A DNA stretch of 64,000 bases from Mytilus californianus (GCF_021869535.1 NW_026262675.1:3968001-4032000), one strand, 5' to 3'; positions 42,433 to 62,077 are shown, numbered from the stretch's first letter. Numbers and translations are program-made. Notes: generated from the sequence alone by a model not told the origin.

Positions 42433-43029
42433 CAAATCATTATCTTGTGACACATTAGATATCAATGTTGCTAATTATAAGTATAATATACTACTTTAGT
42501 ATTACTGAACTGTTAGTAGACTAACAACAGATGAGAGTTTTAAATGCTTACTACACATGAAAAAGTGGATTGGTTTTTCGCAATGCGAATTGGGAAATTC
42601 CTACAATAATAAATTCATAAACTTATATTTTCACTTTTTTTACATTAGTTAAAGCAATCAGTGACCTAACATTGTATTTCAGAATATAAATTAACTGTAA
42701 TTAGAATTATAACACCATACTTTTGTACGTTTTATAAAATGTATTTGTTTTCTAACTATTATCTTTTCATCATATTTAAAATTATTTGTTCTACAAGAAG
42801 GATTTGCATAGCGTGAATGATTTCTATGCATTATTCATTTATAATTAAAAAATGTGAAAAAATATGTTTTTGAATGTGTACGAATTGCTTACGTGTTTAT
42901 TGTTTGAAGTCCTTCGGTTAATTACCTGCCTGGTACAGCCCATCTAATGTTTTTACAAAACACAAACATTATTGAATACATTAAGATCGATAAGTCTTTT
43001 TCTTCATGTTTGTACATTTATAGTTGAAA

Positions 43030-44253
43030 ATGGCAAGATTAATACTATCCGTAATTTTAATTTGGTTTTTTAACGCTTGTTCCCAAGCACAAACTGGTGA
43101 CAATATGAAAGCTTTGATGACAAAATTGTTTACTACAGACGGTTATAACAAAGAAGTACGCCCAAGTCTTAACCAGTCAGAACCCTTACGAGTGGATTTA
43201 GACCTTTTCCTTGTAGCTGTCAATGGTATTGATGAGGTTGGACAAAAGCTGATAACAACTGGATTTGTCGACATATACTGGAAAGACGAATATTTACAAT
43301 GGGCACCTGCTACGTATGGAGATTTGTCAACCATCTATGTATCACAAGATAAAATTTGGAAACCAGATATATCACTACAAAACGGATTCAAAAAGTTAGA
43401 GGAACTAGGAAACGGTTTTATCAAAGTGATCATTGAAAAAGATGGTATGTTGAGATGGTCACCCTTTGAAATATTCGAAACAAAGTGTGATATTAACATT
43501 GAAAAATTTCCATTCGATGAACAAACTTGTGACATTATTTTTGTTGTATGGTCATACAGTATTTCCGAGGTAAAAATTTCAAAAGGATCGAAAGGAATAA
43601 ATTTTTACAATTTCAAAGGTAATGGGGAATGGAAAGTTGTGTCGACTTCAGCCACCGTAGATTCATCTGCAGAAACAAGAGTCAAGTTTTCCCTTACTGT
43701 ACGCAGAATTCCTACATTTTATTTGATAAATGTTATCGCACCTATTGTATTATTGGCTGTATTAAACATATTTACATTTGCACTACCAGTAGACTGTGGT
43801 GAGAAGATGAGTTACTCTATTACTGTGTTTCTGTCGTTTGCCGTATTTTTGTCAATTGTCAGTTCAACGCTACCAAAAACCGCGGGGTCTATTTTGGAAT
43901 TTTACTTAATGTTTCAACTTGGAATGGGAACTATCGTTGTTATTGTCACTGCTGTGGAACTCCGATTACACTTCCGAGCAAAGCCTGTCCCTAAATGGCT
44001 ACAAGTTGTCTTTACTCTATCGTTCATTAAATACATGCGAAGTAAAAAGAATGTTGGATGTTCTGACGTCAATACTCAAAATGATAGTGCTACCATGAAT
44101 GGTGAAGTCATTAAGACGGAACGAACCCACACCGACTCTACAGAATTGACTTGGCCAGATATAATTGCAAGAGTTGACATGATTCTATTTTGGGTTTTAT
44201 TAGTTACAGTCATTATCATGACATTAATTATATATCTTCTGCTAACTAATTAG
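43030..44253 (+). CDS. nAChR-like Cys-loop ligand-gated channel subunit 1 (non-alpha, intronless CDS, 407 aa)
   Basis: Signal peptide, WKPD, Cys-loop CDINIEKFPFDEQTC, four TM segments, M2 GEKMSYSITVFL. No loop-C vicinal CC. ATG at 43030; the track starts at an upstream TTG. Confidence 0.93.
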   Translation: MARLILSVILIWFFNACSQAQTGDNMKALMTKLFTTDGYNKEVRPSLNQSEPLRVDLDLFLVAVNGIDEVGQKLITTGFVDIYWKDEYLQWAPATYGDLSTIYVSQDKIWKPDISLQNGFKKLEELGNGFIKVIIEKDGMLRWSPFEIFETKCDINIEKFPFDEQTCDIIFVVWSYSISEVKISKGSKGINFYNFKGNGEWKVVSTSATVDSSAETRVKFSLTVRRIPTFYLINVIAPIVLLAVLNIFTFALPVDCGEKMSYSITVFLSFAVFLSIVSSTLPKTAGSILEFYLMFQLGMGTIVVIVTAVELRLHFRAKPVPKWLQVVFTLSFIKYMRSKKNVGCSDVNTQNDSATMNGEVIKTERTHTDSTELTWPDIIARVDMILFWVLLVTVIIMTLIIYLLLTN

Positions 44254-45267
44254 TTAGATGTTATATTTTTCGTTTTAGCGAAGTTGCATTATCTTTGTGG
44301 TTTTATAACTTTTCTATTACACTAAAATGTTAGAGGAGCACACTTTTTTATCGATAAGACTAGAATTCATGACATTCCATTATATTTAGACTGTGCCATG
44401 GTGGGTAATGTATGCATAGCAGGAATCGCTTACGCTGTCGACGAACAAAATCTCGATCTGTTTGGAGTTCGTGTGATTCCCTAAGTTTTTATTTTTGGGT
44501 GGTAAACTAGTATTCCGTATGGATTTATGAGCTTTGAGCATTGTACAGTTGTCTCTTATTTACATTGACAAGACAACCTACTTAGAAAGAATTAACATAA
44601 TATGATTAAAATATGACTATTGTAAGTCTTCCAAACTATCTTGGCATAAGGAATACGGAAAAAACGTTCTATAGGGTGTAATTTTAATTGCTGATGAGAA
44701 GAGTGAAACCTTTTGCTGAAATTTTGTTCGGAATGACCATCCGGCAAAGGGAGTGTGTTGAGGAAAATATATCATTTCATGTTGATAAAGGAAAATATAT
44801 TTTGAAAACTCAGCGTGTTTTTATATTCAATTAAAGATTATTGATTTGAAGTACCGGGGTTGACCTCTGAGGTAAGAGCGTTTAACTTAAGTAAGTTCAT
44901 TTGAGTTCTCTAAGGGAAGGTAATATGTTGCAGTCGATGCTTCTTGTCAAGATGAATAAGAATATATGTTGTTTAAGGGTGGGGATCTCTGTGGTTTATG
45001 AACTTTTTTTAACTATATTGAAGAGGGGACGGGATCACATTCGTTGGTAACTGTTCAATATATTTCAAACACTTTTTGTCAAAAGGGTTAGAATCATATA
45101 TCTATGATATATATAATTGGTACTAGTTTATAAAAAAAAAAAATTAAAAACTTTTTTTTTAATAAGACAATGAAGTAAGTCGTCCCTTCTTTATGTCCAA
45201 AATAGAAATACCCTTCACTTGATCTCACCCGTATCAATGAAGAATCAAAATAGTACCATACAAAACT

Positions 45268-45268
<1 letters not shown>

Positions 45269-45308
<40 letters not shown>
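45269..45308. repeat. (TAA)n microsatellite
   Basis: About 13 units. Confidence 0.9.
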
Positions 45309-45309
<1 letters not shown>

Positions 45310-46510
45310 TATTTATACATTCAAGATATAAATATGAAAATGATTAGATATTAAATATTTGAGAAAGTTTCTCTCGTTAAATTTATTTCTTCAATATAAA
45401 TTTTGAGTAACATCACGTATAATGCTTGTCTTTTAAGCATGGTACGTCGATCAGCAAATTTGTACTGTTTACTTAAAGACAAAACTTATTGTATTTTCTA
45501 TCACGAGAATTTAGAAAATATCATTATGAGTAAGCGTTTAACTAAATCATATTATTTCTGTAGTATTCAAGTCCAAATACTTCAGAATATAAAAAAAAAT
45601 TAATTAGACTATTGCTTTTGTATGGCTATAAGTATGTTTTTTTCATTTTGTGAAACTGATTTGTTCTACATTAAGTATTTTTTTTCGACAATGCGATACA
45701 ACAAATGAAGCGTGATATATTGAATGCATTTTCATCTATGATTTCAAGAAATATCAACATCTGTTTATTTGTGCATTCATTGTTTATGTATTAATTGATT
45801 GAAGTCATTCAGTGAAGAAAACTCTTGGTCCAACCCACATAATCCTGTCTCTGAACACAAACATATTATTAAAACACAAAGAACGATCAAGCTTTTCTTG
45901 TGTTATACATTAAAAGAAGAGTTGGCGATATTTTGTCTACCAAAAACTTCTTTTTTGTTTTCTGACAGACATATAACAAGCAAAAAGAGATGAAAGCTTC
46001 GGTGTCTTATTTTTTTTAATACATTCTTCTTCCATATAATGCCCATATTCAGCATGTTGAATATTTTAGCAAGATGCACATGATTAAAAACTGGTTAAAA
46101 GCGAAATTATTGAATTGGTTAGTTAGTGGTGTTGTCACTTGAAACTGGAATATCTCAAGTCACACTGCTGTGAAAATGTCCGGAGGCAGTTAGTTGACTG
46201 TATTTATGTAGAAGGACCACTTCCTACAATCTTTTGTAGCTGGCTGTAATAGGTATTTGTGATGTCCTGTACGACTGGAGCTTCTTGATTATTTTTGAAG
46301 GTATTTTTTTTCTAGTCGAGAGCGACCCGGTCATTCGTTATTTTGTAGCCAATGATAAGTCGTGCTTCTTTACTCCTTTGGTATTTCGAGCAGAGGAAGT
46401 GTAAGAAATCACGGCTTCGACTGGTCACACATTTAACCCTGCATCATTCACAAACCAGGAGATTTGTTTTAGAAAATTCATAAATCCATCCTTCACTCCT
46501 TTTACATTAA

Positions 46511-47116
46511 GGTAACTGGGGTGTCTTCCTCCATCTTGGATTTTGAAATAGCAGATAACAAATGGTCAGGATCTAAAATGAAATGTGCAAATTTCGAGAG
46601 TAGTATGTAATTCATGTGTAAGAATTTTCATGTTAATATAGAAAATTATGTGTTTTATCGTAATTATGGCTGGTTTTTTTTACAAAAAACAGAATATTTT
46701 TGTTTGATTCATTTTTTTTCCAACTATTTCAACTTTGCCACATAAGGGGAGATAACTCAGATAAAATAACTTTTATAGTAGAATGTGTTGTGAATTTACC
46801 TATTTTAATTATGTAGTAAGAAAACGAATCCGATTACCCCTTTTTTTCTTTTTCTTATCTGAAAGAATATAATTAGAGCTATATTTTCATATTTTATCTT
46901 AAAATTCTATGGTGTAGTTTTCTTTTTATCACACAAAATTGGGTTTTCCATTTATAATCTATACGAAATCTGATAATTTTGCACAACTTGCAGCGTAAAA
47001 AAAAACCGGTGACCCATACTTTTTATTATATATTTGAAAAAAGTATGATATAAACTACATTTTTTGACAAATTATTAAAAAATTCTATGGATTTTAATTT
47101 AGTCCCCCCATCTACC
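46511..47116. mobile_element. Non-autonomous DNA transposon with TTAA TSD (Kolobok-like)
   Basis: TTAA|GGTAACTGGGG ... CCCCCATCTACC|TTAA. GG start, imperfect TIR. Confidence 0.65.
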
Positions 47117-47149
47117 TTAATATAAAAAAAATCTACCGTATTTATACTT

Positions 47150-47860
47150 GGTATATAAATACACAAAATTCCTTTTAGAAACGGTATATAGATGTATCAT
47201 CAGGATGTTCGACTAAATATCTTTTTAAAGTTCTTACCACCATTCTTTCTACAGTAAAAAATGACCTTCAGAAATATTGTGATGAGGAATGTTCAACCAG
47301 CGGTATCAATCAGATGTGGATTATAAAAAAAAAATCCATAGATTTACTTCAATAGTTTCAATCTAAATCCTTACAATTTTACAGTAATATCAAAACTTTT
47401 GATTTTTCTACATTTTACACTAATATTCCCAAAGCTCAGTTGAAAGATCGAATTCGTCGTCCCATTTAACAGACTTTTTTTTTTTTAACAAAATGGGATT
47501 CGTAGATATACACTTCTTTTTTTAAGTCAAAATTCTGGACTTTTTGATCAACAACATATTTGTTGAGTTCGGTGGATTGATATTTCAACAGATAGGTGTG
47601 ATTCAAATGGGAACTAATTGTGCAAACCTACTGGTCGACTTATTTTTGTACTCAGAAGCAGAATTTATACAAAACCTTCTCAAAGACAAAAACAGTCTTT
47701 CAAAGTTATTTATTTTTACATCCAGATATATTGATGATGTCAGGTCGCTCAAATTTCAGTGAGTACTTGCATCTAATATATCCAAGTGATCTTAAGATTA
47801 AGGATACTACCAAAACTAGAAGGTATCTTGATATTTTCCTCGATATTGACTATAGAATCT
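47150..47860 (+). mobile_element. Degenerate Penelope-like reverse transcriptase fragment
   Basis: Frameshifted NNIFVEFGGLIFQQ..IQMGTNCANLLVDLFLYSEAEFIQ..RYIDD..IYPSDLKIKDTT..YLDI. These resemble PLE RT motifs (GIPMGTNCAPLLADLFL type). Confidence 0.75.
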
Positions 47861-47987
47861 ATGACATTTATGTAGAAAATAAGATTACAGTGGCACCACA
47901 AATAAACTACTGTTATGGTAAATTCGTATAAATAGGAGCAAAAACACACGAATTAAGTGAAAAAAGGAGACATTGAAAGATATTAAA

Positions 47988-48269
47988 AACAAGAATGTGT
48001 CCATAGTACACGAATGCCCCACTCGCACTATCATTTTCTATGTTCAGTGGACCGGGGTCAAAACTCTAATTTGGCATTAAAATAAGAAAGATCATATCAT
48101 AGGAAACATGTGTACTAAGTTTCAAGTTGATTGGACTTCAACTTCATCAAAAACTACCTTGACCAAAAACTTTAACCTGAAGCGGGACAGACGGACGAAC
48201 GGACGAACGGACGGACGGACGGACGCACAGACCGAAAAATATAATGCCCCACCTAGGGGCATAAAAAAA
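47988..48269 (+). mobile_element. Short HINE-like element (ATGCCCC family)
   Basis: Starts AACAAGAATGTGTCC..ATGCCCC. (GACG)n at ~48187-48226. 3' hairpin ATGCCCC-ACCTA-GGGGCAT (48244-48262) and A-run. Confidence 0.75.
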
Positions 48270-48709
48270 TTGAAGCTCCGTGTTCCACACGTCTGTGGTT
48301 TCACTGACGAACGAAAAGGTCGACAGGAAATAAGCGCTTTGAATTGACTCTGGCGAAGTCTATGATAGCAGATACACCAAGATTCAGTCAGTATGTCCGA
48401 AATGAAGGATTACAGTTATTAACTTGTGCCGATTTTGTTCAGAGAACGAGCTGTGTGTTCCTGCAAACTTATTCGAAAAACAACTATATGGTCTTAATAC
48501 AAATATGGTCCGTCCCCTTACTATCCAAAGTAGATATATACTCACATGGTCCGACAAACGCGTATGGTCGGACCATATGAGTATACGCGTATGGTCCAAA
48601 TACTCGCATAGTCCGAAACATATGAATGGGTGTATATATAGTCTATTGTTGACGACTGTGTGTAGACATGGTCTATTTTTGAAGGCGGTGTGTAGACTAT
48701 TATATTCTA

Positions 48710-49649
48710 GAATCATGTGCAAAACAGTGTAGCCGAGACCATTGATTGGCGCGCTAAAATATCTCATTGACTGGGTCAGATTAAGTGAACGTTCGTCTGT
48801 AACGCCCACAACTCACGACGTATTTATTACAAACATTTAAACTGTGGAGTCACCAAAGGGTCTCAACGCCTCAATAAAATAATTCGAAAAACTAATCAGG
48901 AATAACCTTTGTGTTTTGATTTATGTTGAATACTTAAACGTTCTTTACTTTACGTGTTTTTGTTATGTTTTGATAATGAATTTTTATGATATCGGACGTT
49001 CTTTCAGCAAAAAAGGATTTAACTGGCTTTAAAAGTCACAATGGATGTGTTGATTATTATCTTTTTTTCGGACGTCAAAGCGATTTAACAATTGCGGTTG
49101 TCTAATTATGTCATCTTTTAACTTTTATCTGGTCAAAATTTTATTTTAGAACGAATGCATGACCAACTTTAAAAAGTGTGCAAACACAAAACATATAGAC
49201 AAAATATACTTCTTTCCTGTCTTTTTCGTACTTGCAAGTTATTAGACAGTAAAAAGGCTATTTGGATCAAGCCTTGTGAAATTTGCATTTACGTTTTTGA
49301 ATAGGTAAAATGTATAGTTTGGTGATCTTTTCTGCTAACTACTATACTTGTGAAAAACCCTTGGCAACAGAAACATATTCAGCTTTTTTTTTAATCGACC
49401 CAATTTACATAGTAATGGACGACTTTGTACATTTTATGATCGCAAATAAAATATGTATATAATATACTGTGCACTGTAGTTCGTATATATACTGAGACCC
49501 TTTGGCAACCCCACAGTTTAAATGTTTATAATAAATACGTCGTGAGTTGTGGGCGTTACAGACGAACGTTGAACCTAATCTGACCCAGTCAATGGGATAT
49601 TTTAGCGCGCCAATCAATGGTCTCGGCTACACTGTTTTGCACATGATTC
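48710..49649. mobile_element. Non-autonomous DNA transposon with ~155-bp TIRs, TA-flanked
   Basis: TA|GAATCATGTGCAAAACAGTGTAGCCGAGACC... and ...GGTCTCGGCTACACTGTTTTGCACATGATTC|TA. The near-perfect inverted match extends to ~48866 and ~49494. Confidence 0.85.
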
Positions 49650-49879
49650 TATATATTATACTAAACTACATGTAATTTGAAAAGATAAATAATGCCCCAT
49701 ATTTTTTATATAATTACTCAAACATCATGATAACAGTGCACAATTGTTTTATGTATTAAAAATTTCATTGAAATCCAGTCAACGCAGAATGGATTAGTTT
49801 TTTTTTTCGACGGAGTTCAACCACTATCATTTATTGATTTTGAACAAAAAAATTGAAGAGGGTACCTTTGCCTTGGTAG

Positions 49880-50300
49880 GCAGAAGAGAGAGGCGAAAGA
49901 TACCAAAGGGATATTCAAACTCATAAGTAGAAAATAATCTGACAATGCCATGGCAAAACTATCAAGTCAGAGACTTGTAAAGCTACAGTAAAAGAGAGGC
50001 GAAAGAAACCAAAGGGATATTCAAATTCATAAGTAGAAAATGAACTGACAATACCATGGCAAAAACAAAAAAGTATCAAGAGACTAACATCGGTAAATAA
50101 ATCACAACATAGAAAACTAAAGACTGAGCAACAAGAACCCCTTTAAAAACCGGGGGGTGATCTCAGATGCTACGGAATGGTAACTTGATCCTTCTCCTCT
50201 TGTGGAATCCGTAATGTTGCCCATGTAAGAACAAACTCGGCGATAAGTCTTATTTGGTGGGTCACATTCGAGGAAAAGAGTATATATATAACTGTTTTTA
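49880..50300. repeat. Interspersed repeat fragment with internal ~106-bp duplication
   Basis: AAGAGAGGCGAAAGA..CCAAAGGGATATTCAAA at ~49886 and ~49992, followed by TGAGCAACAAGAACCCC..GGGGGTGATCTCAG. Confidence 0.55.
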
Positions 50301-51654
50301 GTCAGGTTATTCAAAGGAGAACTGTATGATTTAGATACATTGTATCCAATGTCTCTGGCACTAAGAACTGAAAATGTGATGGATGTACTTATATTACTCC
50401 TAAAATCGTTAACAATATAGAAACCAGTAAAAGGTTATATAGAGCACCCGTGGTTTGGTTCTATAAGAATGCAAGTAAGATTGTATAAGGATAAAACATT
50501 ATTTAAACAACGGTTAGTTCGATCATTAAATCAAATACTTAGATTTCACGAAATAATCATGCATTGTCTGCCATTTAATATCCATACAATTGAATAGCTA
50601 AAAATAGTGAAAAGAAACTAGTTGCTAGACGACAAAACAAACAAACAAGAATCTTCAAGACTGTTTATTAAAAAAGTGATATTTAAGTATGTGACCATAA
50701 GTTTAAAACCCCTGGTATATTCTCCAAATTAGCAATTATACAGTTTCAGTTTCCATGAGATTATAGTTGATAAAATTTTAGCTTTCATCGGAGTTAATAT
50801 TTTTTTTTTAATTTTAAAGGACTTATTTTCAATGACCAGATAGATACCTATAACATTATTCACACTTCTAAGTTTTCATAATATTTGTTTTTATTTTCGG
50901 GTTTTACGGAAAAAAATAATCTTATTCACAAATCACTTTTCGCCAAATAAGATGACTCATATTACCACTGGTTACACACACAGGCGGTTAGCATGTAACT
51001 ATAGAAGACTACTAATTCTTCTTTATTAAACAGATATTTTGAAAACATTTCCCAATCTTTATCGACTATCCTACAATTAAAATTCTTTAAAGTCTCGGGC
51101 AAAAGTACGTAATCTTAACGAAATGGTAGGTTTTAGACGTAAATAGTCTTTGTTTATTACAAACATGACGAAATAGGACAGGTGTTTGTCTTGGGATACA
51201 GAATTTACACATTTTGATGCTACGGAGAAATGGTGACTTCCGAAGAAGTGGACCACATGATTCTGCAATCGATACAAAATGCAAAGAAAAAAAGGAGAAC
51301 ATTTTAAAAACATCAACCCGATGTCTTATGACTTGGTGGGTGGAACTTAAATTAAGCATTGTCATCAGCATCATGAAAGCGTGTCCGATACCTGATGCCT
51401 CAATGGAGACTTAGCCCGTCAAACTTTGAATTGAGAAACAGAAATGTTAACTAAATAAGGCTAAACACTTATATTGTAATGCCTGTAAAAAGAGAAGACA
51501 GCTTGTATTCACCTCTCCTCCTAAATTTGAATGAAACTTAGACAAAATTCTCAATCCCAAATATTATTGTTAATCTTTTGTTTCCTAATCCGAATAAATT
51601 TTGTTCAGTTCCAATAGCAAATTGTGGACTATGTGGCCATATTTATAAAACGAA

Positions 51655-51910
51655 AGCGCATCGGTGCTATCGTTATAGCGCGCTGCCGTCTAGAGTCCAT
51701 TGGATATATCCCCGGCCGGATCAAACCAATGACATACACATTGGTATCTGCTCTCAAATTAGCATGAAGTAATTAGGAGGAGAGCAAACACTGGTTCTTT
51801 CGATGTCAGTTTAATGTGTCAGGGTAGGTTGACATGTCGTCATGTTGACTGTTAAGATATGAACCAGTAAGATAAAATCCGGATCGGCGTGTCTGCTGAA
51901 TACATTCTCG
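51655..51910 (+). mobile_element. Old, decayed tRNA-derived SINE
   Basis: CCCCGGCCGGATCAAACCAATGAC..ATTGGTATCTG..AGAGCAAACACTGG..TAATGTGTC resembles a bivalve SINE consensus I recall. The promoter boxes are degenerate. Confidence 0.45.
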
Positions 51911-52655
51911 TACTTATGTGTATATAATAATTGCCAATGGATTTAAAAACTAATCCATCATCATTCTTTTTCTCCATAAAACAGGATAGGCATCTCGTAT
52001 TCGCAACTTCTTACATAGCATAAGTCTAACTGTACATGAGAAATCTAAAGACATGTTCAAAATCTAAAGTAGGCAAAGCCATAAAATGCTTTAAGTACAG
52101 GTGTTCTTTTGGAAAAAGAAAATCTCCATCCGATTTAAGGATAAGGCCAGGTTTATTTCGGAACTGAATGCTTCTTTTTGGAATTTTTGGGGATGTAAAA
52201 GCGTTGACAGAAGCACAATTTATATGAATCCGCGTGGAGCGCTTTATATAAAATATCATTTGCTCAAGGCTTTTTAAAATACTCTTAAAAAATTACAAAA
52301 AGAAGCTTTTAAATCTTAAATATAATTACATGTTTATGGTATAACCATGAAATTAAGAGTTAAAACAAGCATTTCGTCTGCTTTTCCATGCCTTATTTAA
52401 TGTTGTCATGGAGGGCATGTACATTCAAAGATTTTGCATGCTATAGGGAAATAAAATCTAAAATTTGGAATTTCTTGACTTATCAAAATAACGAAAAAAG
52501 TAATTAAGATAATTATACGGACCGATATATTGTTAGACATAGTGTTCTTGAATAATTCCATTCTTGTTTTCTACGTCACTTTACAAACTACAAACTATAA
52601 TTAAGGTTTACCATACAATTTTCAAAATCGAAAGAAATGCAACCTGTTTTTCAAC

Positions 52656-52948
52656 TATTATTGTTGATATGCGTATCCGTTCTTATCATTGTTAATATGC
52701 GTATCTGTTCTTATCATTGTTAATATGAGTTTCTGTTCTTATTATTGTTGATATGCGTTTCTGTTCTTATTATGTTAACATGCGTTTCTGTTCTTATTAT
52801 TGCTGATATGCGTTTCTGTTCTTATAATTGCTGATATGCGTTTCTGTTCCTATTATTGTTAACATGCGTTTCTGTTCCTATTATTGTTGATAGGCGTTTC
52901 TGTTTTTATTATTGTTGATATGCGTTTCTGTTCTCATTATTGTTGACA
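52656..52948. repeat. 28-bp minisatellite (~10 copies)
   Basis: Unit TATTATTGTTGATATGCGTTTCTGTTCT, head-to-tail with no spacers. Confidence 0.9.
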
Positions 52949-54859
52949 AACGTTTTAAAGGGTGTGACGCAAGGGTCGACCTTCCAAAGAAATTACAATC
53001 TTCTGGAATTTCAGCTGCACTGTTGGCTGAAGGATTTTTTAGATACCATTTTCATGTAAATAGTGAAATATCTATACTTTTTTCCGGGCTGTGTTTTTCG
53101 GGGTTTTGTTTTTGTTTCTTCTGCTATTTTTTTAATAACTGATAACCTATAAAAAAATTGGTTGACTTTTTGCAGACGATTTGTTGCTGACGTACTCTGA
53201 ATCTGAGGACAATTATGAAGAATAGCTGGTTGATTTGAATCCAAAGAGATCAAAGCCCTGTCTCAACAGTTATTGTCTCTAAGTTGATCGTAACATTCAA
53301 TGATAATTGAATGTCGAAATTGTAAATGATCACATAGGTATAACAATAATTTTTTTTTATACCAATGCGTGCGCATAGTATAAATTTCGAGAATTTAAAT
53401 ATGTTGCTCGAAAAAAGAAACATGTCAAATGTTTAAACATATATCAATAGTTTTGAGGCGGGTTCACCGTTTAGGCGACAAAAATGTTAAGATATGTGAT
53501 TTTTCATTTTTCTTAACTCCAACATTAATAGGCAAAGCATGATATTTTTACTGCTATGGTGGTTGTAATCTAAGATTCAAGGTTACAAATAGAAAACATT
53601 GAAATATAAATGAAAAAAGCTGAATGCCTTTATTTCCATAAATAATGTGAATAAAAGTTACACGTTTAGAATAGTCTTCATGTAATGTTGATGCAGATAG
53701 CTATACTCTATTGAATTAAGTCTCTTTGCTATTCATTGTTGAAATATATAACATTAAATTCGAATGCCATATACATACACACGTTGGTATAACTTATCTA
53801 AATGGGAACTCGCCAACAAGTTTAGACAATACCAAAAACTTAAAAAGTAATGCATTTCAAAAATTGAATTTAACCATAATAAAACGACCTCATTTTCCCT
53901 GTACACTGAATTATATGTTCTATAATGTATCTTTTATTTGTTGATTGATCGACATCTAAAATGAAGGCCGTTTGAGATAAATAAAACTATTTTAATCTCG
54001 CAAATATGTATCTTCAGTGGTTGTACTATGCCATAGCTTAAGGGTTTCATTTTGCTATCTGCTGATATGAGGTCTTCAAATGCTTCTGGATAAATTTATT
54101 CATTGACATATTGTATAGACACTTGTCTATTAAGGAAGACTGTATATTTACCCCTAGATATCTTTTGGTTGTTTGGGTAGCTGTCTCATAAATCTTTACC
54201 CCAAATATCCTTAAATACATTCTGACCGGACGTCAAAATTTATACGTCCCGAACAGCCAAATGGACGCCCCATATAGTCAAGGTGTTACTGCCGGATGGA
54301 CAAAAACAAAAGGATGACCAAATTTCTATACGCCAATATATCCTTGTGGTTCCAGTTATATTAGATATACTCATTATATCATATAATCTCCGGATTAATA
54401 TTTTCTCGACAATCCCTTGTACCGAAACCAAATAAAAAATTCATTATCAGATATTAACGAATATGATTTTGAAGTTTTTGGGAGTGATAATTAACATCGA
54501 ATTTAAATTTCTAGAGTCAGGGTATATATATTACAAACCAAACAGTTCTAGTGTACAAATCATGTAAAAAATTCTCCCAATTTTTGTATATTAACTATTA
54601 CATAGAAATAAGAAGATGTGGTATGAGTGCCAATGAGACAACCCTCCATCCAAGTCACAATGTGTAAAATGTAAAACATTATAGGTCAAAGTACGGCTAT
54701 GGGCAGAGATACGATATTTACATATATAATGTTTATATATTTGATTAACAGGTCTATCTCAATAAAATTGCAATATATCTGTGTCATATATATATATATA
54801 TATCTATAAAGTTTACATTTAGATGAATTGTTAAAAAACGCATTAACATCAGTGATAAA

Positions 54860-56170
54860 GGTATCTTTCATTCGTTGTTTAAGCTCATGTGTAAATATAT
54901 CAACATTATTTACGCTTTGGTTTAGCCATACATCATAAAACCATATTTACATAAAATATCTCAGACTGAACATGCCCAATTAAATTTGTCTTTGGGTTTT
55001 TTAAATGAACTCTCCAACATCTATTCATAACATGCTTTTAATATACAGTTATCAGTATTTAATAATTTAAACCAAAACTGAATCATTTTTCTTTGTCTTT
55101 CATAATACATTGGGTAACGTCCCAATTCACAGTAAACCATGTAAATAACAGCAGTTTTTCGAACCTTTCAGAATTCGTTTTAAAAAATACAAATGTACTT
55201 TTTCTATATCATCAGCTTTATGATTACCCCACACTTCACAGCTATAATTAAGAATACTAGATACATAAGTATCAAATAAGGACAGTAACGTTTCACAGTT
55301 ATAATAATCATCTACAATTTTACTACATAAAGCAAAAACAGCCTTTCTACCTTGATTGGCTAACATTTTTTTGTGTATGTAAAAAGCTACCATTATAATT
55401 AATAAGGATACCTAAATATACAAAATTGTCACATATATCAAGTTGGTTATTATTTAAAAACCATTTTTCTTGACTTTTTACACTACCTCTATTTCGAAAC
55501 ACGACTACTTTAGTTTTAGACGTTTTGATATATAAACCATATTCCTTTGAAGAAGAGTTTACAGCATTTATCATATTTTGCAAATCATCTATGTTCTCGC
55601 TAAATAAAAGTGCGTACATAAGTAAGAATAAATTTAAAGATTTCAATTCATATGACCGACAGCCATTATTAATTAGCTCTACTTCCATATCATTAACATA
55701 CACTGAGTATAATAATGGAGGTCAAGATTCCCCTTGCATCAAGCCAGTATTACATCGAAAAAATCTGAAAGTTTTCCATTACACTTTATACAAGTTTTTA
55801 ATTTTGAATACATAGATTTAATTACAGTAAGAAGTTTACCATTAACTCCACATCTAACTAGTCTAAACCATAACTTTACATGAAAAACACTATCAAAGGC
55901 TTTAATATAATCGATGAAACAACAGTACAAGCGTTTACCCTTTCTTAACGACTTAGAAATCAAAGAATGAAGACAGAAGATGGCATCAGAAGTGCCGTAT
56001 CCAGGACGGAATCCAAACTGTGCATCTGTCAGAGTGTTGTTAATCTTGCACGGTGTTATAAGTCTTGAATGAATCAACGACGTAAATAGTTTTCCTTGAT
56101 GTGACACCAATGAAATACCTCTGTAGTTTTTAGGATCGTCAGGATTTCCTTTCTTAAATATTGGAATTAA
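54860..56170 (-). mobile_element. Frameshifted LINE reverse transcriptase remnant (CR1/L2-like group)
   Basis: IPIFKKGNPDDPKNYRGIS, QFGFRPGYGTSDAIF, FIDYIKAFDSV, YVNDME and LFLLMYA (the catalytic DD is missing), LGILINYNG, ILNYSCEVWG, spread across three frames. Confidence 0.85.
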
Positions 56171-56582
56171 AGAGAAGATTAATTTTAGCTAAATTTTTGT
56201 CCATATTTTTTATTTGCAATGAAATAATACTTAACTAAGACTTACATGTAATAAATAGGAAGTTGTTTTTTTAAAGAAAGTAGCCGTTTTCAAATTATCA
56301 TCTAAATGAACAGGCAACATGAGATGCACAATGACATTATGTAAGAAATATTGTAAATCATTGATAATAGGTAGTTACTGATACAATACAGTTCCGTATT
56401 GGAATCTAGGATTATTAAAAAAAAATCAGGGTCTTTATTTAGACTCAATATTTTGTATCAGCCTCTTAATTTCTATGCAATAAGGATATATGTAAACCAT
56501 AATTATACTATCTAAAACGATATATAACTAAAACTAAATACAGAAATTGAATCCAAATATGTAATTTCTTTTCTGATTAGTG

Positions 56583-56830
56583 AAATCAAAAATGAAAAAC
56601 GAAAACAATTTTGTTTTTCATTTTGGTTTTTGAGAAATCAAAAACGAAAAACGAAAACACTTTTGTTTTCCGTTTTGGTTTTTGAGAAATCGAAAACGAA
56701 AAACGAAAACAATTTTGTTTTTCATTTTGGTTTTTCAAAAATCAATAACGAAAAATGAAAACACTTTCGTTTTTTTGTTTTTGATACCTCAAAACGAAAA
56801 ACGAATGGACGCAAATATACACGGACCTAA
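56583..56830. repeat. 52-bp self-complementary tandem repeat at a MITE-like end
   Basis: AAATCAAAAA(C/T)GAAAAACGAAAACA..TGTTTT..GGTTTTTGAG at 56583, 56635, 56687 and ~56739. Ends GGACGCAAATATACACGGACC. Confidence 0.75.
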
Positions 56831-56913
56831 TTGACTACCCTCTAAATACTTAATAGGTAAATTCAGAATAAACGGATTTATGACGGTGTTCTCGGTAGTA
56901 AAGTAAATCACTT

Positions 56914-58095
56914 TTATTTATATTTCGATGAAAGTAATCCCAAGATGGTCACAGTAACTATGAACGTGGAAACTAATGATACCCAGAACAATACAAAATC
57001 TGTTGTTGATGTTATATCACTCCAAGTCTTTTCTCCGTCCTCATTTTCCTTATCTTTTTCTGGATTGTCAAATTTTTTATCTGAACTTTTTACTCGAGTT
57101 TTACATTTACTTCTGAAAATTCTTTGAATTTTATGTGGGACTTTGTCTTTCCGATGATGAATTCTTAATTCAAAGGCTGTCACAGCTACAACGAACGTTC
57201 CCATGCCCATTTGGAACATTAGATAATACCCCAGTAATGATCCCGATGTCTTCGGAAGTTCAGAACTTATAATTGTTAAGAAGACGGCAAATGCCAGAAA
57301 AACTGTGATGGAGTATCCCATTTTCTCCCCACTGTCTGCTGGGATTACAAACGTAAAAACATTTAGTATGCCAAGTAATATAACAGGGACAATGACATTC
57401 ATGACGTAGTACGCTGAACTACGCTCGAGAGTTATTGTAAATACAACTCTTGACTCCGACGACAACACATCGTCCCCGGCTGATGTCGATACAACACTCC
57501 ACACACCATTAGGATCTAATGCTTCCAGAAGTATGCCTCTACTTCCTTTTGTCACATTTACGTCCAATATGCTACTGGACCAGACAACAAAAACTATTTC
57601 GCATGTTTGACGGTCAAAAGGAAAATATTTGATATCAATATTACACTTTGTTTCAAACACTTCAGTTGGCAACCAAGTAATTTCGCCTGTTGGCAAAATC
57701 TGAACATTTATAAAACTATCACCAAGTTCCTTAAGTTTTGAAAATCCATTTTGAAGTGTTATGTCTGGTTTCCATATATCACTTTGAGAAACATATATAT
57801 ATTCTACGTTACCGTGTGAAGCTGAGTTCCATGTAAGGTACTCGTCTGTCCAACTTATAAACAGAAAACCTGTTGTCGTTAGTTTTTGTGTTATTTCGTC
57901 TATTCCATTGATGCCGACAAGATAGAAGTCCAAGTCCACCTGCATTGGCTTTGTTTGATCAGCGTTTGGGCGGACATTCTTTTTATAAGTGTTGGTAGTG
58001 AACAATTGAGTAACCAAGCTTTTCACGTCATCCCCTGTTTGTCCATTGCAGGCTGACAAGCACCAATAATAAAGAAAAATAGTTCTAAGAATCAT
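56914..58095 (-). CDS. nAChR-like Cys-loop ligand-gated channel subunit 2 (non-alpha, intronless CDS, 393 aa)
   Basis: Signal peptide, WKPD, Cys-loop CNIDIKYFPFDRQTC, M2 GEKMGYSITVFL, four TM segments. No vicinal CC. Confidence 0.93.
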   Translation of the reverse strand: MILRTIFLYYWCLSACNGQTGDDVKSLVTQLFTTNTYKKNVRPNADQTKPMQVDLDFYLVGINGIDEITQKLTTTGFLFISWTDEYLTWNSASHGNVEYIYVSQSDIWKPDITLQNGFSKLKELGDSFINVQILPTGEITWLPTEVFETKCNIDIKYFPFDRQTCEIVFVVWSSSILDVNVTKGSRGILLEALDPNGVWSVVSTSAGDDVLSSESRVVFTITLERSSAYYVMNVIVPVILLGILNVFTFVIPADSGEKMGYSITVFLAFAVFLTIISSELPKTSGSLLGYYLMFQMGMGTFVVAVTAFELRIHHRKDKVPHKIQRIFRSKCKTRVKSSDKKFDNPEKDKENEDGEKTWSDITSTTDFVLFWVSLVSTFIVTVTILGLLSSKYK

Positions 58096-59395
58096 TACGA
58101 ATCGTATTCAGTGTCAGAATTATTATCAACTATTATACGTATTCTCCTACCAACTATTAATGTACTGGAAAATAAACCTTTGTTTAGTTTAACGCCTTAA
58201 CATATTCTACAAATAAAGAAAAATATTTAAATTCAACTGTCTCTAAAAAGACCTTATTATCCCTGGGTTCATGTAGTTCTTATTGTTGTATTGAATTATA
58301 GTTCGTATTATGTTTCTTATTTATATACATTTGTCAAAATATCATTTATTCTTTTATTTCTGCTTTTTAAAAATCCCAATCATTCATTCATGTGATTTAG
58401 AATTTGATAGAGCCAGACAAAAGGTAAGAATAAAGTTTCATGTAATAATTAGGCATAGTTAGATTGAGACATACGTATTCTATAAAAAGAGGATATTTTC
58501 TTTCAACGAGAAAAATAAAAGTTTAAAGTTCATTAAATGGAATGAGTTTATTTTTTCTCGTTTGATACCACCACTATGATTGAATATAGAATAATAGAGT
58601 ACAGTTTATACCAGGTAAAACTCAAATTGTATGTTCTTCGGGGTCTTCACGGGTGATAGGGGCTTATCGTCTCTGTCTGTACTTCATATCCCCTGAGGCG
58701 TCATTCGAATGTGATAAACAGCACTGACAGCAAATATGAGCCTATATATCTTTTGAAACCCGAATAACATTCAAATAATATTGGAGGGTAATGATTTCAA
58801 AATTAATTACCATTCTGATCTTCGTTTTTGTACACACGGCTCATATACCCTGTCGAGGAAACCAATCAATTTACATGATTAGCCGGGATATTTTACTTCT
58901 GTATAATAAAAAATAATACATATTTAGTTCCCTTGTTTAAGGGAGGTAGGAAAGATTGTTTTTTAACTCAATAAAATTCATATTTCCCGAATGCAGCACA
59001 CGATTTTCTAGGGCGAACAAATGTCTCCTTGCAGTGTTTATTCACTTCTTTCTTTGATATCTAGAATGATCAAGTGCACACGATTAATCTCAGTATGTTA
59101 ATTTTATACTTTCATGACTTAAATTGTATATCAATCATTAAATAATGAAAACATTCGATACGTTTTTTCTTCAGGTTTGATTATACGCCTGCAATAAGCT
59201 TAAACATGATATTTACAATGATTTTGATATTTTATACCCGTTGAAACAATTTAAAATGCGCGTTTCGTCGCGCGAAGTTTTCACGATGTTCAGATGGGAA
59301 TATGATGTTTCGTTCAATATCACCTAGGATTGTCTCAACCAATCAAATGTATTAAATAAACTCATCATAGATACCAGGATTGAAATTTTATATTT

Positions 59396-59439
59396 GCGCC
59401 AGACGCGCGTTTCGTCTACAAAAGACTCATCAGTGACGC
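59396..59439 (-). ncRNA. Type I hammerhead ribozyme, perfect minimal motif (solo)
   Basis: Reverse complement: gcgtca CTGATGA gtct-tttgt-agac GAAA c-gcgc-GTC tggcgc. Fully paired 6-bp stem I and 4-bp stem II, GUC cleavage triplet, palindromic ACGCGCGT. Embedded in a repeat spanning ~59365-59550. Confidence 0.85.
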
Positions 59440-60871
59440 TCGAATCAAAAAATGTTAAAACGGCCAAATAAAGTTGAAGAGCATTGAGGACAAAAAATTC
59501 CTGAAAGTTTTGCCAAATACAGCTAAGGTAATCTATTCCTGAGGTAGACATTAGTATTTCAAAAATTCAAAATTTTGTAAACAGTTAATTTAAACCGTCT
59601 ATATTTAATGCGTACATATGACAAGCAGAAACGTGTCGTTTAATACCGCTTCTTTATTACATGTATCAGTCAATGGACTAAAACACAATGAAAGCACAAG
59701 GGCTTGATTATTATGTTTTATAATTGTACCTGTCTTCTTCTTTTATGTCTATTCATGTCATATTATTTCTGTAGGAACCAAAAGTAGTATGTTTGTAATA
59801 TAAACTATGCACGCACGTATCTTAAAAAAATCCACAGTTGAAATATGTAGACTGGAAATAATACAAAAAAAAAAAAAAAAAAAAACTGTACAAGGATTAA
59901 GCATATATGCATCACGATAAAAACCCTTTTAAATGTCAGTTGATAAAATATTTGGAGCGCTAGAAGAGGAATTTATAGGATGAAAAATAATCACGTTTTA
60001 TTTCAAAGTAAAAACCTGATCGAATAAATGATAAAATTTTATTTTCCATTCTTGTTTTCCTGATTTACAGTATGGAATAAATCACTACAGCGCAAACTAA
60101 TCCGTGTTAACGTACTGTGATTTTTTTATTCGCGCAAAATGTTTGTAGTTTATAAAACAATAACACATCAGGATAGCCAATGGTCATAGATAAAGCGCCA
60201 TTTCGTTAACAGATATATACATCCACATCTAGTATTAAGTACATCCTGCTCTAACTACTATTTTGTTCAGTGTTCAATGTCACTTGACCAAAACTAGGGT
60301 ATAACGCTTCTTTGTAAATTTGAAACCAACGATTAATATTCCCAAATTAACCGAAAACTTATAACGTGTAGATATAATAGAATCTCAAGTAAGCTCAACC
60401 AACAAAGAACTATCAAAGACATATTTTGCTATCCTCTACATATATGTTCCTCTTCCATAAAATCCTGCTCTACATTTGAAGACTAGCTTGCATGAAAAGT
60501 AAAGGCGTTTTTGATACTTAACGAAAATATGGTAATTATCAATGGGTAACGGTGCTTACTCTCGTCTTTGTGAACTATTATAATTATTTAGGGTTATAAC
60601 TCTTATATTGAGGAAAATTGTCCCGAGCATTATATCTTATTGCAAGAGTACATGAAATATTTGATACTGTATTTTAACATAAAATATTGATTCATGCTAA
60701 CCATCTGAAATGTAATATTGGAGAACAAATCAAATTGCTTTATTTAAGTGCTTTCGTCATTGATCATATTTAGTCGGTTTAAAAAGCACTTACTTGGTAC
60801 TCTTTAATTACTCTTATATGGAATCGTTTGCATACAAACTGAACGAAAAGATCAGTTTGAGATTGCTGAAA

Positions 60872-62077
60872 ATGTTCTACATTATTTTTGCAATATGCAT
60901 TTACTTCCCGAGCGTTAATGCGGGATCAACACTTGGTACTGACATCGCAAGTTTATATGAGAATTTATTTGAAACCAGTAACTATATGAAGGTTGTGCGC
61001 CCGAGTATCGACCAGACTTTGTCTACGTTGGTGTCCATTGACTTGCACGTAATAGGAATAAACGGAATAGATGAACTGTCACAAAAGCTTGCAACGACGG
61101 CTTATTTGTCTGTACACTGGTTGGACGAATACTTGACATGGACACCAATGTTCTACGGTAATGCAGATTACATTAAAGTCCCTCAAGATGATGTGTGGAA
61201 ACCAGACCTTACTTTGAAAAACGGATTCACAAAACTGACAGAACTAGGAAGCTCAGTGATATATGTTGACGTACAGAGTACCGGAAATGTGTCTTGGTAT
61301 CCATTTGAAGTATTTGAAAGCAAATGTGAAATAGATATAACATATTTTCCATTTGACAGACAGGCATGTCAGTTAATATTTGTGGCATGGTCAACTAAAG
61401 ATCTCTCGATTGAAGTAAAATTGGGAGGCGAAGGCGTTGTTTTATTGGATTATGCTGATGACAATGCCGAATGGACAATTGTATCGACTTCAGCATCTCA
61501 ATATTCTTCAGATTTGGTACCAAAAGTTACATTTACATTAAATCTCCAACGAAATGCTGGATTCTATGTCACAAACATTATCGTTCCTGTTATTCTCCTT
61601 GGTATTCTGAACTTTTTCACATTTGTACTTCCGGCAGACAGTGGTGAGAAGATGGGATATTCTATAACCGTATTTTTAGCGTTTACTGTTTTCCTTACAA
61701 TTGTGAGTTCGGAGCTACCGAAAACATCTGGTTCGATGTTAGGATACTATCTGATTTTTCAGCTAGGAATGGGTATATTTGTAGTATGTGCGACTGCCGT
61801 AGAATTGAGACTTCATCACAAGAAAAGCCCTGTCCCAAATAGAATCAGACAAATAGTTAAATGGCATTGCAAGTTTAAAGGCGTGGAGGTGTGTAAAACG
61901 GGGAACTGCAAAGCAAACAGAAATGAAGTCGAAACTTTTGACGAGGAACGAATGTCGGAAGACGACATTAACTGGATTGATGTTACTTCTCTCTTAGATT
62001 TTATTCTATTTTGGTTTTCATTTGCACTGAATCTGATTGTAACTACGGCAATAATATCCATCCTTGCATCAAAATAA
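60872..62077 (+). CDS. nAChR-like Cys-loop ligand-gated channel subunit 3 (non-alpha, intronless CDS, 401 aa)
   Basis: ATG at 60872 gives signal peptide MFYIIFAICIYFPSVNA. WKPD, Cys-loop CEIDITYFPFDRQAC, M2 GEKMGYSITVFL. No vicinal CC. Confidence 0.93.
   Translation: MFYIIFAICIYFPSVNAGSTLGTDIASLYENLFETSNYMKVVRPSIDQTLSTLVSIDLHVIGINGIDELSQKLATTAYLSVHWLDEYLTWTPMFYGNADYIKVPQDDVWKPDLTLKNGFTKLTELGSSVIYVDVQSTGNVSWYPFEVFESKCEIDITYFPFDRQACQLIFVAWSTKDLSIEVKLGGEGVVLLDYADDNAEWTIVSTSASQYSSDLVPKVTFTLNLQRNAGFYVTNIIVPVILLGILNFFTFVLPADSGEKMGYSITVFLAFTVFLTIVSSELPKTSGSMLGYYLIFQLGMGIFVVCATAVELRLHHKKSPVPNRIRQIVKWHCKFKGVEVCKTGNCKANRNEVETFDEERMSEDDINWIDVTSLLDFILFWFSFALNLIVTTAIISILASK

What the first reader, a model, noticed from the sequence alone, without database searches (positions are those of the whole stretch)
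43030..62077. Cluster of three intronless nAChR-like channels lacking the acetylcholine site: candidate bivalve chemosensory receptors
Seen in all three: loop A Tyr is replaced (LQNG, LQNG, LKNG); loop D Trp is replaced by F, F, Y; loop C is short with no YxCC or Tyr; loop B Trp is kept. The Cys-loop, -1' Glu (GEK) and 9' Leu are intact, 20' is Ser, and the M3-M4 loop is short. The ORFs are uninterrupted despite clear divergence, in a region where TE ORFs are decayed. Known: bivalves have large expansions of nAChR genes, including intronless tandem copies. Cephalopod chemotactile receptors are intronless nAChR derivatives that lost ACh binding and sense poorly soluble compounds. Inference: cation channels gated by non-ACh ligands, possibly used in contact or environmental sensing (foot, mantle, gill, larval settlement).
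Basis: partly seen in the sequence, partly recalled or inferred. Interest (0 to 1): 0.75.

Follow-up and report, generated by a model that had tools for sequence, protein, structure and literature searches.

The report
Mussel orphan nicotinic-type channel gene cluster
Three intact, intron-free mussel genes encode nicotinic-receptor-like cation-channel subunits that cannot bind acetylcholine in the usual way, but they are ordinary members of a published bivalve gene expansion of over 100 copies, and a sensory role is untested.

Summary
Three uninterrupted ORFs (43030-44253 +, 56914-58095 -, 60872-62077 +) encode Cys-loop receptor subunits. All keep the Cys-loop, -1' Glu, 9' Leu, 20' Ser and the loop B Trp. 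All lack the loop A Tyr and the loop C Cys pair, and have F/F/Y at the loop D Trp.

The genome is Mytilus californianus. The three genes are syntenic with intact M. edulis orthologues and under purifying selection (dN/dS 0.12-0.21). Gene 2 is transcribed; gene 3 showed no RNA; gene 1 was not tested.

The missing acetylcholine site is not special to this cluster. All 77 full-length single-exon paralogues I fetched from this genome lack the loop C Cys pair, and 76 lack the loop A Tyr. This is the bivalve nAChR expansion of Jiao et al. 2019. Proteins identical to genes 1 and 2 are already in NCBI.

New detail: pocket-facing positions are fixed within each orthologue group but differ between paralogues.

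No evidence bears on a chemosensory role or on kinship with cephalopod chemotactile receptors. A role as complementary or accessory subunits of acetylcholine-gated heteromers is not excluded. The scan flagged a similar cluster elsewhere in this genome (s1-302642).

The parts
43030..44253 (+). Gene 1: single-exon CDS of 407 aa for an nAChR-like subunit. Loop D F79 (43264-43266), loop A Q117 (43378-43380), loop B W174 (43549-43551), Cys-loop C153-C167, -1' E258 (43801-43803).
   Evidence: The exact protein is already in NCBI/UniRef (P0025). The M. edulis orthologue is intact, with dN/dS 0.12.
56914..58095 (-). Gene 2: single-exon CDS of 393 aa. Loop D F77 (57865-57867), loop A Q115 (57751-57753), Cys-loop C151-C165 (57601-57645), loop B W172 (57580-57582), -1' E257 (57325-57327), 9' L267 (57295-57297), 20' S278.
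   Evidence: AlphaFold2 model with pLDDT 86.8. Orthologues of at least 90% identity occur in M. edulis, M. galloprovincialis, M. trossulus and M. coruscus. dN/dS is 0.14.
56798..58198 (-). Transcribed span of gene 2: the CDS plus about 100 nt of 5' UTR and at least 116 nt of 3' UTR, collinear with the genome with no intron. Coverage continues downstream to at least 56426.
   Evidence: Contigs of 1314 and 1401 nt in runs X1 and X2 cover exactly this span, with no cover in the neighbouring intergenic DNA or on gene 3. The few reads from stranded RNA-seq run X21 all lie in the orientation expected for a minus-strand RNA.
60872..62077 (+). Gene 3: single-exon CDS of 401 aa from the Met that starts the signal peptide (the mechanical ORF starts at TTG 60794). 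Loop D Y78 (61103-61105), loop A K116 (61217-61219), loop B W173 (61388-61390), Cys-loop C152-C166, -1' E259 (61646-61648).
   Evidence: The M. edulis orthologue has dN/dS 0.21. No RNA was seen in the four runs laid.
39251..63884 (.). Block collinear with the M. edulis locus L081, in the order PhyH-domain gene, gene 1, gene 2, gene 3. The gene 1 to gene 2 spacer is 12.6 kb here against 4.7 kb in M. edulis.
   Evidence: Gene calls in L081 and blastn collinearity at 85-88% around each gene.

Best explanation
The three ORFs are working genes of Mytilus californianus for subunits of pentameric, cation-selective Cys-loop channels of the nicotinic branch. They form an old tandem array with at least four members; the fourth lies 26 kb to the right of the window. 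The array belongs to a bivalve expansion of more than 100 intronless copies.

Each subunit keeps the gating and pore machinery: the Cys-loop, the loop B Trp, -4' Asp, -1' Glu and 9' Leu. Each has lost the principal-face acetylcholine box: loop A Tyr is replaced by Gln or Lys, loop C is short, and the vicinal Cys pair and the two loop C Tyr are absent.

I infer that they assemble into channels whose interfacial pocket binds something other than acetylcholine. The pocket would be built on the invariant loop B Trp and an aromatic loop D residue. Specificity would be set by the pocket-facing residues on strands beta2 and beta6 and by loops C and F. These residues differ between paralogues but are fixed within each orthologue.

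Shown here: gene integrity, selection, synteny, transcription of gene 2, and the residue pattern. Inferred only: channel assembly, cation permeation, a non-acetylcholine ligand, and any sensory use.
For: - Domains and closest solved relatives.
- Pore and loop residues.
- Confident nAChR fold: pLDDT 86.8; Z 30-31 to muscle nAChR and alpha7.
- Purifying selection against M. edulis: dN/dS 0.12, 0.14 and 0.21 overall, and 0-0.08 in M1-M3.
- Synteny.
- One-to-one orthologues across Mytilus species on short branches, inside a 52-row mytilid clade with aLRT 98.
- Gene 2 is transcribed and collinear with the genome.
- Family-wide pattern: of 77 full-length paralogues, 77 lack the loop C Cys pair, 76 lack the loop A Tyr, 77 keep the Cys-loop and 9' Leu, and 67 keep the loop B Trp.
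- In the 107-sequence bivalve alignment the loop B Trp is invariant. The columns equivalent to alpha7 Q57, Q117 and L119 sit at the 94th, 100th and 90th percentile of ECD variability.
- Pocket-facing residues are identical within each orthologue group but differ between groups.
- After duplication the binding loops evolve faster than the ECD core: dN/dS 0.48 against 0.23, Fisher p = 6e-5.
- At least 23 canonical YxCCxExYxD loop C motifs occur elsewhere in the genome, against 1 in the control. True alpha subunits therefore exist separately.
Against: - No ligand, current or tissue localisation is known.
- The loop D position stays aromatic (F/F/Y), and the alpha7 L109-equivalent position stays I/V/L. 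The complementary face could therefore still serve an acetylcholine site beside a true alpha subunit.
- Binding-loop dN/dS stays below 1, and loops C and F are loosely constrained in any Cys-loop receptor.
- A comparable lophotrochozoan orphan, Alpo4, gave no current with any compound tried (PMC10338036). A loss of ligand gating or a need for partners is therefore possible.
- Gene 3 showed no RNA in the runs laid, and gene 1 was not tested.
Confidence: 0.5

Rival explanations
1. They are non-alpha subunits (complementary or accessory) of acetylcholine-gated heteromeric receptors. A canonical alpha subunit supplies loops A-C. These subunits supply the complementary face or fill the fifth position, tuning pharmacology, conductance or trafficking.
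For: - The best solved matches include the non-alpha subunits beta4, beta2 and delta.
- Public annotation calls the orthologues beta-4-like or beta-like.
- Absence of the Cys pair defines non-alpha subunits.
- The loop D position is aromatic in 94 of 107 family members, and the L109 equivalent is I/V/L.
- The genome has at least 23 canonical alpha-type loop C motifs that could supply partners.
Against: - More than 100 such subunits against a few dozen alpha-type genes is a very lopsided ratio.
- The loop A Tyr, kept by vertebrate beta subunits (beta4), is replaced throughout the family.
- Loop C is shorter than in beta4.
- Jiao et al. report the highest nAChR expression in gill, where choline acetyltransferase is not expressed.
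Confidence: 0.3
2. They are environmental chemoreceptors in the strict sense proposed by the first reader. They would be expressed in exposed epithelia (gill, mantle edge, foot) or in larval sensory cells, and gated by external natural products. This would be convergent with, or related to, cephalopod chemotactile receptors.
For: - They share the intronless structure, the lost acetylcholine residues and a diversified pocket with chemotactile receptors.
- CRT1 likewise uses loop D and loop E aromatics under diversifying selection (bioRxiv 10.1101/2025.03.03.641191).
- A 2026 preprint reports a 'CR-like' clade that includes bivalves and proposes divergent clades as ionotropic chemosensors (PMC13174522).
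- Expression of the family is highest in gill in five bivalves (PMC6896357).
Against: - Nothing here tests tissue or ligand.
- Structure-based identity to CRT1 (26%) and CRB1 (22%) is no higher than to alpha7 (29-31%) or 5-HT3A (28-29%).
- CRT1 is not among the 60 best sequence matches in the PDB.
- The loop C tips here are rich in acidic and hydroxyl residues rather than hydrophobic ones.
- Orthologue dN/dS of 0.08-0.17 in the ECD shows stable receptors, not fast-evolving ones.
Confidence: 0.15
3. They are decaying or neutral retrocopies whose open frames survive by chance.
For: - Jiao et al. note that more intron-poor than intron-rich copies have little or no expression.
- Several paralogues in this genome carry stop codons.
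- Gene 3 showed no RNA.
Against: - dN/dS is 0.12-0.21 at dS 0.17-0.27 for all three genes, and near 0 in the transmembrane helices.
- Intact syntenic orthologues occur in M. edulis for all three genes, and in three more Mytilus species for gene 2.
- Gene 2 is transcribed.
Confidence: 0.02

Closest known systems
Expanded intronless, tandemly arrayed nAChR genes of bivalves (Jiao, Cao, Zheng, Liu, Guo 2019, BMC Genomics 20:937; PMC6896357)
   Same: - Bivalve host, single-exon genes, tandem array, and LBD plus transmembrane-domain architecture.
- Loss of canonical acetylcholine-binding residues.
- Lineage-specific expansion: 99-217 genes per bivalve, including two mussels.
- The paper already suggests that LBD diversity broadened ligand specificity and that the family helps to monitor the environment.
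   Different: That paper did not include Mytilus californianus. It did not describe the subfamily-wide pattern found here: loop B Trp invariant, loop A Gln/Lys, loop D Tyr/Phe, and pocket residues fixed per orthologue group.
Cephalopod chemotactile receptors (octopus CRT1, squid CRB1)
   Same: - Intronless nAChR derivatives without the acetylcholine box.
- Cation channels.
- A pocket shaped by loop D and loop E residues that vary between paralogues.
   Different: - No demonstrated sensory expression or ligand here.
- Identity to CRT1 and CRB1 is only 26% and 22%, no closer than to alpha7.
- The close relatives that carry an organism name are all bivalve, so the expansion looks independent.
- The loop C tip is polar or acidic rather than hydrophobic.
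Vertebrate non-alpha nAChR subunits (beta2, beta4, delta)
   Same: The best sequence matches among solved structures. No loop C Cys pair. The same pore motif, DSGEK...L9'.
   Different: - The vertebrate subunits keep the loop A Tyr and loop D Trp (beta4) and have a longer loop C.
- From my own knowledge, not tested here: they have long M3-M4 loops and many introns.
Alpo4, orphan nAChR-like receptor of the annelid Alvinella pompejana (eLife 2023; PMC10338036)
   Same: A lophotrochozoan nAChR-like orphan without the loop C Cys pair. It does not respond to acetylcholine, and its ligand is unknown. Structural match: Z 26.0, 26% identity.
   Different: Alpo4 keeps the full aromatic set: F103, W159, Y199, Y205 and W65. 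The mussel genes keep only the loop B Trp and a loop D Phe or Tyr.

Membership tests
Cys-loop pentameric ligand-gated ion channel, cationic nAChR/5-HT3 branch | Extracellular ligand-binding domain followed by M1-M3, an intracellular loop and M4 | tested here: met
   PF02931 plus PF02932 in all three genes. The AF2 model has a beta-sandwich followed by four helices. Z is 28-31 to nAChR and 5-HT3 structures.
Cys-loop pentameric ligand-gated ion channel, cationic nAChR/5-HT3 branch | Cys-loop disulphide pair separated by 13 residues | tested here: met
   C153-C167, C151-C165 and C152-C166. The pair is invariant in 77 paralogues and 107 bivalve homologues.
Cys-loop pentameric ligand-gated ion channel, cationic nAChR/5-HT3 branch | Cation-selective M2 signature (-1' Glu, no -2' Pro insertion) and the 9' Leu gate | tested here: met
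   The motif is D-[SC]-G-E-K in all three, with 9' Leu. Selectivity itself was not measured.
Acetylcholine-binding alpha subunit | Vicinal Cys pair at the tip of loop C, within the YxCC motif | tested here: not met
   No CC in loop C of any of the three genes, nor of any of the 77 paralogues.
Acetylcholine-binding alpha subunit | Aromatic box: loop A Tyr, loop B Trp and two loop C Tyr | tested here: not met
   Only the loop B Trp is present. Loop A is Q/Q/K. Loop C is short, and only gene 3 has a Tyr there, which its orthologues do not conserve.
Non-alpha complementary subunit of acetylcholine-gated heteromers | Loop D Trp, with loop E hydrophobic residues, facing an alpha subunit's pocket | tested here: inconclusive
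   The Trp is replaced by F/F/Y, so it stays aromatic. The L109 equivalent is I or V. The Q117 and L119 equivalents are hypervariable. Assembly with alpha subunits cannot be tested with these tools.
Bivalve expanded intronless nAChR family (Jiao et al. 2019) | Single-exon LBD-TMD gene in a tandem array in a bivalve genome, part of a lineage-specific expansion | tested here: met
   The ORFs are uninterrupted, and the gene 2 transcript is collinear with the genome. Four copies lie on contig C95, and at least 105 matches were scored in the genome. They fall in a mytilid-specific clade.
Cephalopod chemotactile receptors | Placement inside the chemotactile-receptor clade in a phylogeny | not testable with these tools
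   No labelled chemotactile-receptor sequence could be fetched. Indirectly, identity is 26% and 22% to CRT1 and CRB1 against 29-31% to alpha7, and the listed close relatives that carry a name are all bivalve.
Cephalopod chemotactile receptors | Expression in peripheral chemosensory cells, and gating by poorly soluble external compounds rather than acetylcholine | not testable with these tools
   Only the presence of gene 2 RNA in coded samples is known. No tissue or ligand data are available.
Cephalopod chemotactile receptors | Diversifying selection on pocket residues | tested here: inconclusive
   Binding-loop dN/dS is 0.48 against 0.23 for the ECD core in 14 recent paralogue pairs (p = 6e-5), but it stays below 1. 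There is no difference in the three orthologue pairs. No site-model test was available.

The most novel reading that the evidence does not exclude
The mytilid clade that contains these three genes is an independent, bivalve counterpart of the cephalopod chemotactile receptors. It would be a large set of ionotropic receptors, each with its own fixed pocket built on a conserved loop B Trp. They would sit in gill, mantle or foot epithelia or in larval sensory cells, and report external chemicals such as food, biofilm, settlement cues or toxins.
Probability: 0.15. Interest if true: 0.7.

Novelty: new member of a known kind. Interest (0 to 1): 0.3.

Why it matters
Bivalves carry the largest known sets of nicotinic-type receptor genes, and nobody knows what most of them bind. 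If some prove to be environmental chemoreceptors, that would be a second, independent recruitment of this neurotransmitter-receptor scaffold for sensing, after cephalopods. It would also give molecular handles on mussel settlement and feeding.

This cluster adds no new principle. The genes are already annotated and the family is already published.

What the work here adds is practical.
- It identifies well-behaved candidates for expression studies: conserved one-to-one across Mytilus, under purifying selection, with one shown to be transcribed.
- It gives a short list of pocket positions that differ between paralogues but are fixed within each orthologue.

Tried and rejected
- Chemotactile-receptor papers: Allard et al. 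2023 (PMC10228259) and van Giesen et al. 2020 (PMC7605239) are not held. Receptor features were taken from later preprints of the same group.
- Chemotactile-receptor phylogeny: no labelled sequence could be obtained. The protein search lists only the best 120 hits, and those that carry a name are all bivalve. The PDB sequence search shows only 60 rows, and CRT1 is not among them.
- Foldseek against the PDB and the ESM Atlas feature search confirmed only 'nAChR-like'.
- Run X5, from another species, covered intergenic DNA at depth about 3. I treated it as DNA and not as expression evidence.
- Complex prediction was not used. A predicted interface between Cys-loop extracellular domains would not separate homomer from accessory-subunit models, and the report claims no specific pairing.
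- No site-model test of positive selection (PAML or HyPhy) was available. A Nei-Gojobori count by region was used instead.
- The pseudogene reading was considered and rejected on dN/dS, synteny and transcription.


Full report
**What is in the sequence.**
Each matches both Pfam domains of neurotransmitter-gated channels, with E 1e-40 to 1e-45 for the ligand-binding domain. The closest solved structures are nicotinic receptor subunits beta4, alpha7, delta and beta2, at E about 1e-48. The three proteins are 51-52% identical to one another.

**Check of the residue claims.**
I mapped positions through the HMMER alignments of gene 2 to human beta4 and alpha7 and carried them to the other genes by multiple alignment.
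- The loop A Tyr93 equivalent is Q, Q, K.
- The loop D Trp55 equivalent is F, F, Y.
- The loop B Trp is kept.
- The Cys-loop is C-x13-C.
- The pore has -4' Asp, -1' Glu, 9' Leu and 20' Ser, followed by Glu in genes 2 and 3 (Thr in gene 1).
- Loop C is about six residues shorter than in alpha7 and has no Cys pair.
- The M3-M4 loop is about 44-60 residues.

Gene 3 has a Tyr in loop C, though its orthologues have Leu there. The decayed transposon ORFs are also real: a hAT fragment at 25308-25826 and a reverse-transcriptase fragment at 55742-56110.

**Organism and annotation status.**
The assembly has 1.65 Gb in 175 contigs. Three paralogues that I fetched are letter-for-letter identical to proteins that NCBI names as Mytilus californianus (L003 = P0007, L005 = P0008, L007 = P0010). 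The genome is therefore that of the California mussel. Proteins identical to genes 1 and 2 are already in NCBI and UniRef. Gene 2 has orthologues of at least 90% identity in M. edulis, M. galloprovincialis, M. trossulus and M. coruscus, named 'beta-4-like' or 'beta-like'.

**Are they real, working genes?**
The M. edulis locus L081 carries the same three genes in the same order and orientation next to a PhyH-domain gene. It is collinear with window 39251-63884.

Nei-Gojobori dN/dS against these orthologues:

| Gene | dN/dS, whole gene | dS | dN/dS, ECD | dN/dS, M1-M3 |
|---|---|---|---|---|
| 1 | 0.12 | 0.27 | 0.08 | 0.02 |
| 2 | 0.14 | 0.18 | 0.17 | 0.08 |
| 3 | 0.21 | 0.17 | 0.17 | 0.00 |

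Reads and contigs laid on 56400-62300 gave three results.
- In two runs of the same species, contigs of 1314 and 1401 nt cover exactly gene 2 plus short UTRs (56798-58198). They are collinear with the genome. Nothing covers the intergenic DNA or gene 3.
- A stranded RNA-seq run gave a handful of reads on gene 2 only. All lie in the orientation expected for a minus-strand transcript.
- Gene 2 is thus transcribed at a low level and has no intron in this span. Gene 3 showed no RNA in these samples. Gene 1 could not be tested, because only one such call was allowed.

**The cluster is not special.**
A six-frame search of the genome with gene 2 gave at least 105 scored matches out of 386 candidates. 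Most are single open frames of 380-440 aa without stops, arranged in arrays on many contigs. A fourth member lies 26 kb to the right of the window. I fetched 80 of them, and 77 have full-length ORFs with signal peptides.

| Feature | Paralogues (of 77, including the window's three genes) |
|---|---|
| Lack the loop C Cys pair | 77 |
| Lack the loop A Tyr | 76 |
| Keep the loop D Trp | 5 |
| Keep the Cys-loop and 9' Leu | 77 |
| Keep the loop B Trp | 67 |

The genome also contains at least 23 canonical alpha-type loop C motifs (YxCCxExYxD), against 1 in the reversed control. True alpha subunits therefore exist separately.

This is the situation published by Jiao et al. 2019: 99-217 nAChR genes per bivalve, many intronless and in tandem arrays, few with complete acetylcholine sites, and highest expression in gill. 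The authors already suggest that LBD diversity broadened ligand specificity. A 2026 preprint goes further. It proposes divergent molluscan clades as ionotropic chemosensors and reports a 'CR-like' clade that includes bivalves. Another first-stage note of this scan flagged a similar cluster elsewhere in this genome (s1-302642).

**What the family pattern says about mechanism.**
In an alignment of 107 bivalve relatives, the scaffold is strongly conserved. The loop B Trp is effectively invariant (106 of 107), and the N-G-F that follows loop A is invariant or nearly so (N116 invariant; G117 and F118 in at least 90%). The old aromatic-box positions behave differently.
- Loop A is Q50/K31/E8 and never Tyr.
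- Loop D is Y42/F35/W17, so it stays aromatic.
- The columns equivalent to alpha7 Q57, Q117 and L119 are among the most variable of the whole extracellular domain (94th, 100th and 90th percentile).
- Conserved and variable positions alternate along strands beta2 and beta6, as expected for residues that point into a pocket.

Within the mytilid clade, these pocket-facing residues are identical across species in each orthologue group but differ between groups. Gene 2 has F-F-S/Q/V-I-E-T-L, gene 1 has F-D-Y/Q/V-I-x-R-S, and gene 3 has Y-S-H/K/V-V-N-S-Y. In 14 independent recent paralogue pairs, the binding loops have dN/dS 0.48 against 0.23 for the rest of the domain (Fisher p = 6e-5) and 0.12 for M1-M3. 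In the three orthologue pairs there is no such difference. The picture is divergence of the pocket after duplication, followed by fixation.

**Best reading and its main rival.**
I read the genes as subunits of cation channels whose interfacial site no longer binds acetylcholine through the classical box. The site has instead been re-specified paralogue by paralogue. The ligand, the subunit partners and the tissues remain unknown.

The main rival is that they are non-alpha subunits that complete acetylcholine-gated heteromers.
- For the rival: the retained aromatic at loop D and the beta-like best matches.
- Against it: the lopsided ratio of more than 100 such genes to a few dozen alpha-type genes, the family-wide loss of the loop A Tyr that vertebrate beta subunits keep, and a loop C even shorter than in beta4.

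The pseudogene reading is excluded by selection, synteny and transcription.

**Relation to cephalopod chemotactile receptors.**
The resemblance is one of kind: intronless genes, a lost acetylcholine box, and a pocket that varies between paralogues. Membership could not be tested, because no labelled chemotactile-receptor sequence could be fetched. Indirect evidence does not favour close kinship.
- Structure-based identity of the gene 2 model (pLDDT 86.8) is 26% to octopus CRT1 and 22% to squid CRB1. It is 29-31% to alpha7, 28% to beta2, 28-29% to 5-HT3A and 26% to the annelid orphan Alpo4.
- CRT1 is not among the 60 best PDB sequence matches.
- The 120 closest proteins in the large collection, down to about 40% identity, are all bivalve where a name is given.
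- In the tree, mussel, scallop and oyster sequences form separate clades.

Any similarity in function would then be convergent.

**Verdict.**
It is untested at the level of 'chemosensory receptors'. The cluster is an ordinary, already annotated member of a published gene expansion, so novelty is low. The useful additions are the list of paralogue-specific, orthologue-fixed pocket positions and the identification of conserved, selected, partly expressed candidates for functional work.

Noticed in passing
window 59355-59551: A short dispersed repeat with very high depth in every run laid (up to about 6,000 in the runs of this species and about 112,000 in a run of another species), with reads running on into many different flanks. 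Copies also occur several times in the M. edulis locus L081. It is probably an abundant, transcribed MITE- or SINE-like element.
   Followed up: partly
window 55742-56110 (-) and 56400-56800: A reverse-transcriptase fragment (PF00078) lies about 800 bp downstream of gene 2 on the same strand. A 1535-nt contig in run X2 ends at 56614 and runs off the left edge of the laid stretch. The gene 2 transcript may therefore read into this transposon remnant, or the remnant may be transcribed on its own.
   Followed up: no
G000:C57:11427763-11636663 (loci L002, L004, L005): Three very recent paralogues (dS 0.025-0.038) have dN/dS of 0.8-1.15, and all carry Ala in place of the -1' Glu of the selectivity filter. 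This suggests relaxed or changed constraint on ion selectivity in this young sub-array.
   Followed up: partly
G000:C95:4057565-4058692 (locus L001), 26 kb right of the window end: A fourth intact member of the same array (390 aa, 51% identical to gene 2), with one-to-one orthologues in other Mytilus species.
   Followed up: partly
window 39251-42258: This DNA is collinear with the 3' part of a PhyH-domain gene of M. edulis. That gene ends about 580 bp upstream of the gene 1 orthologue on the same strand. Gene 1 thus sits directly downstream of an unrelated multi-exon gene.
   Followed up: no
window 35914-36434: The stretch that another first-stage note calls a hammerhead pair (s1-340104) matches, at 76-79%, a segment of the M. 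edulis locus that lies outside the syntenic position (L081 1963-2148). It is therefore part of a dispersed repeat.
   Followed up: no
window 25308-25826 (-): A remnant of a hAT transposase C-terminal dimerisation domain (PF05699, E 7e-6).
   Followed up: no
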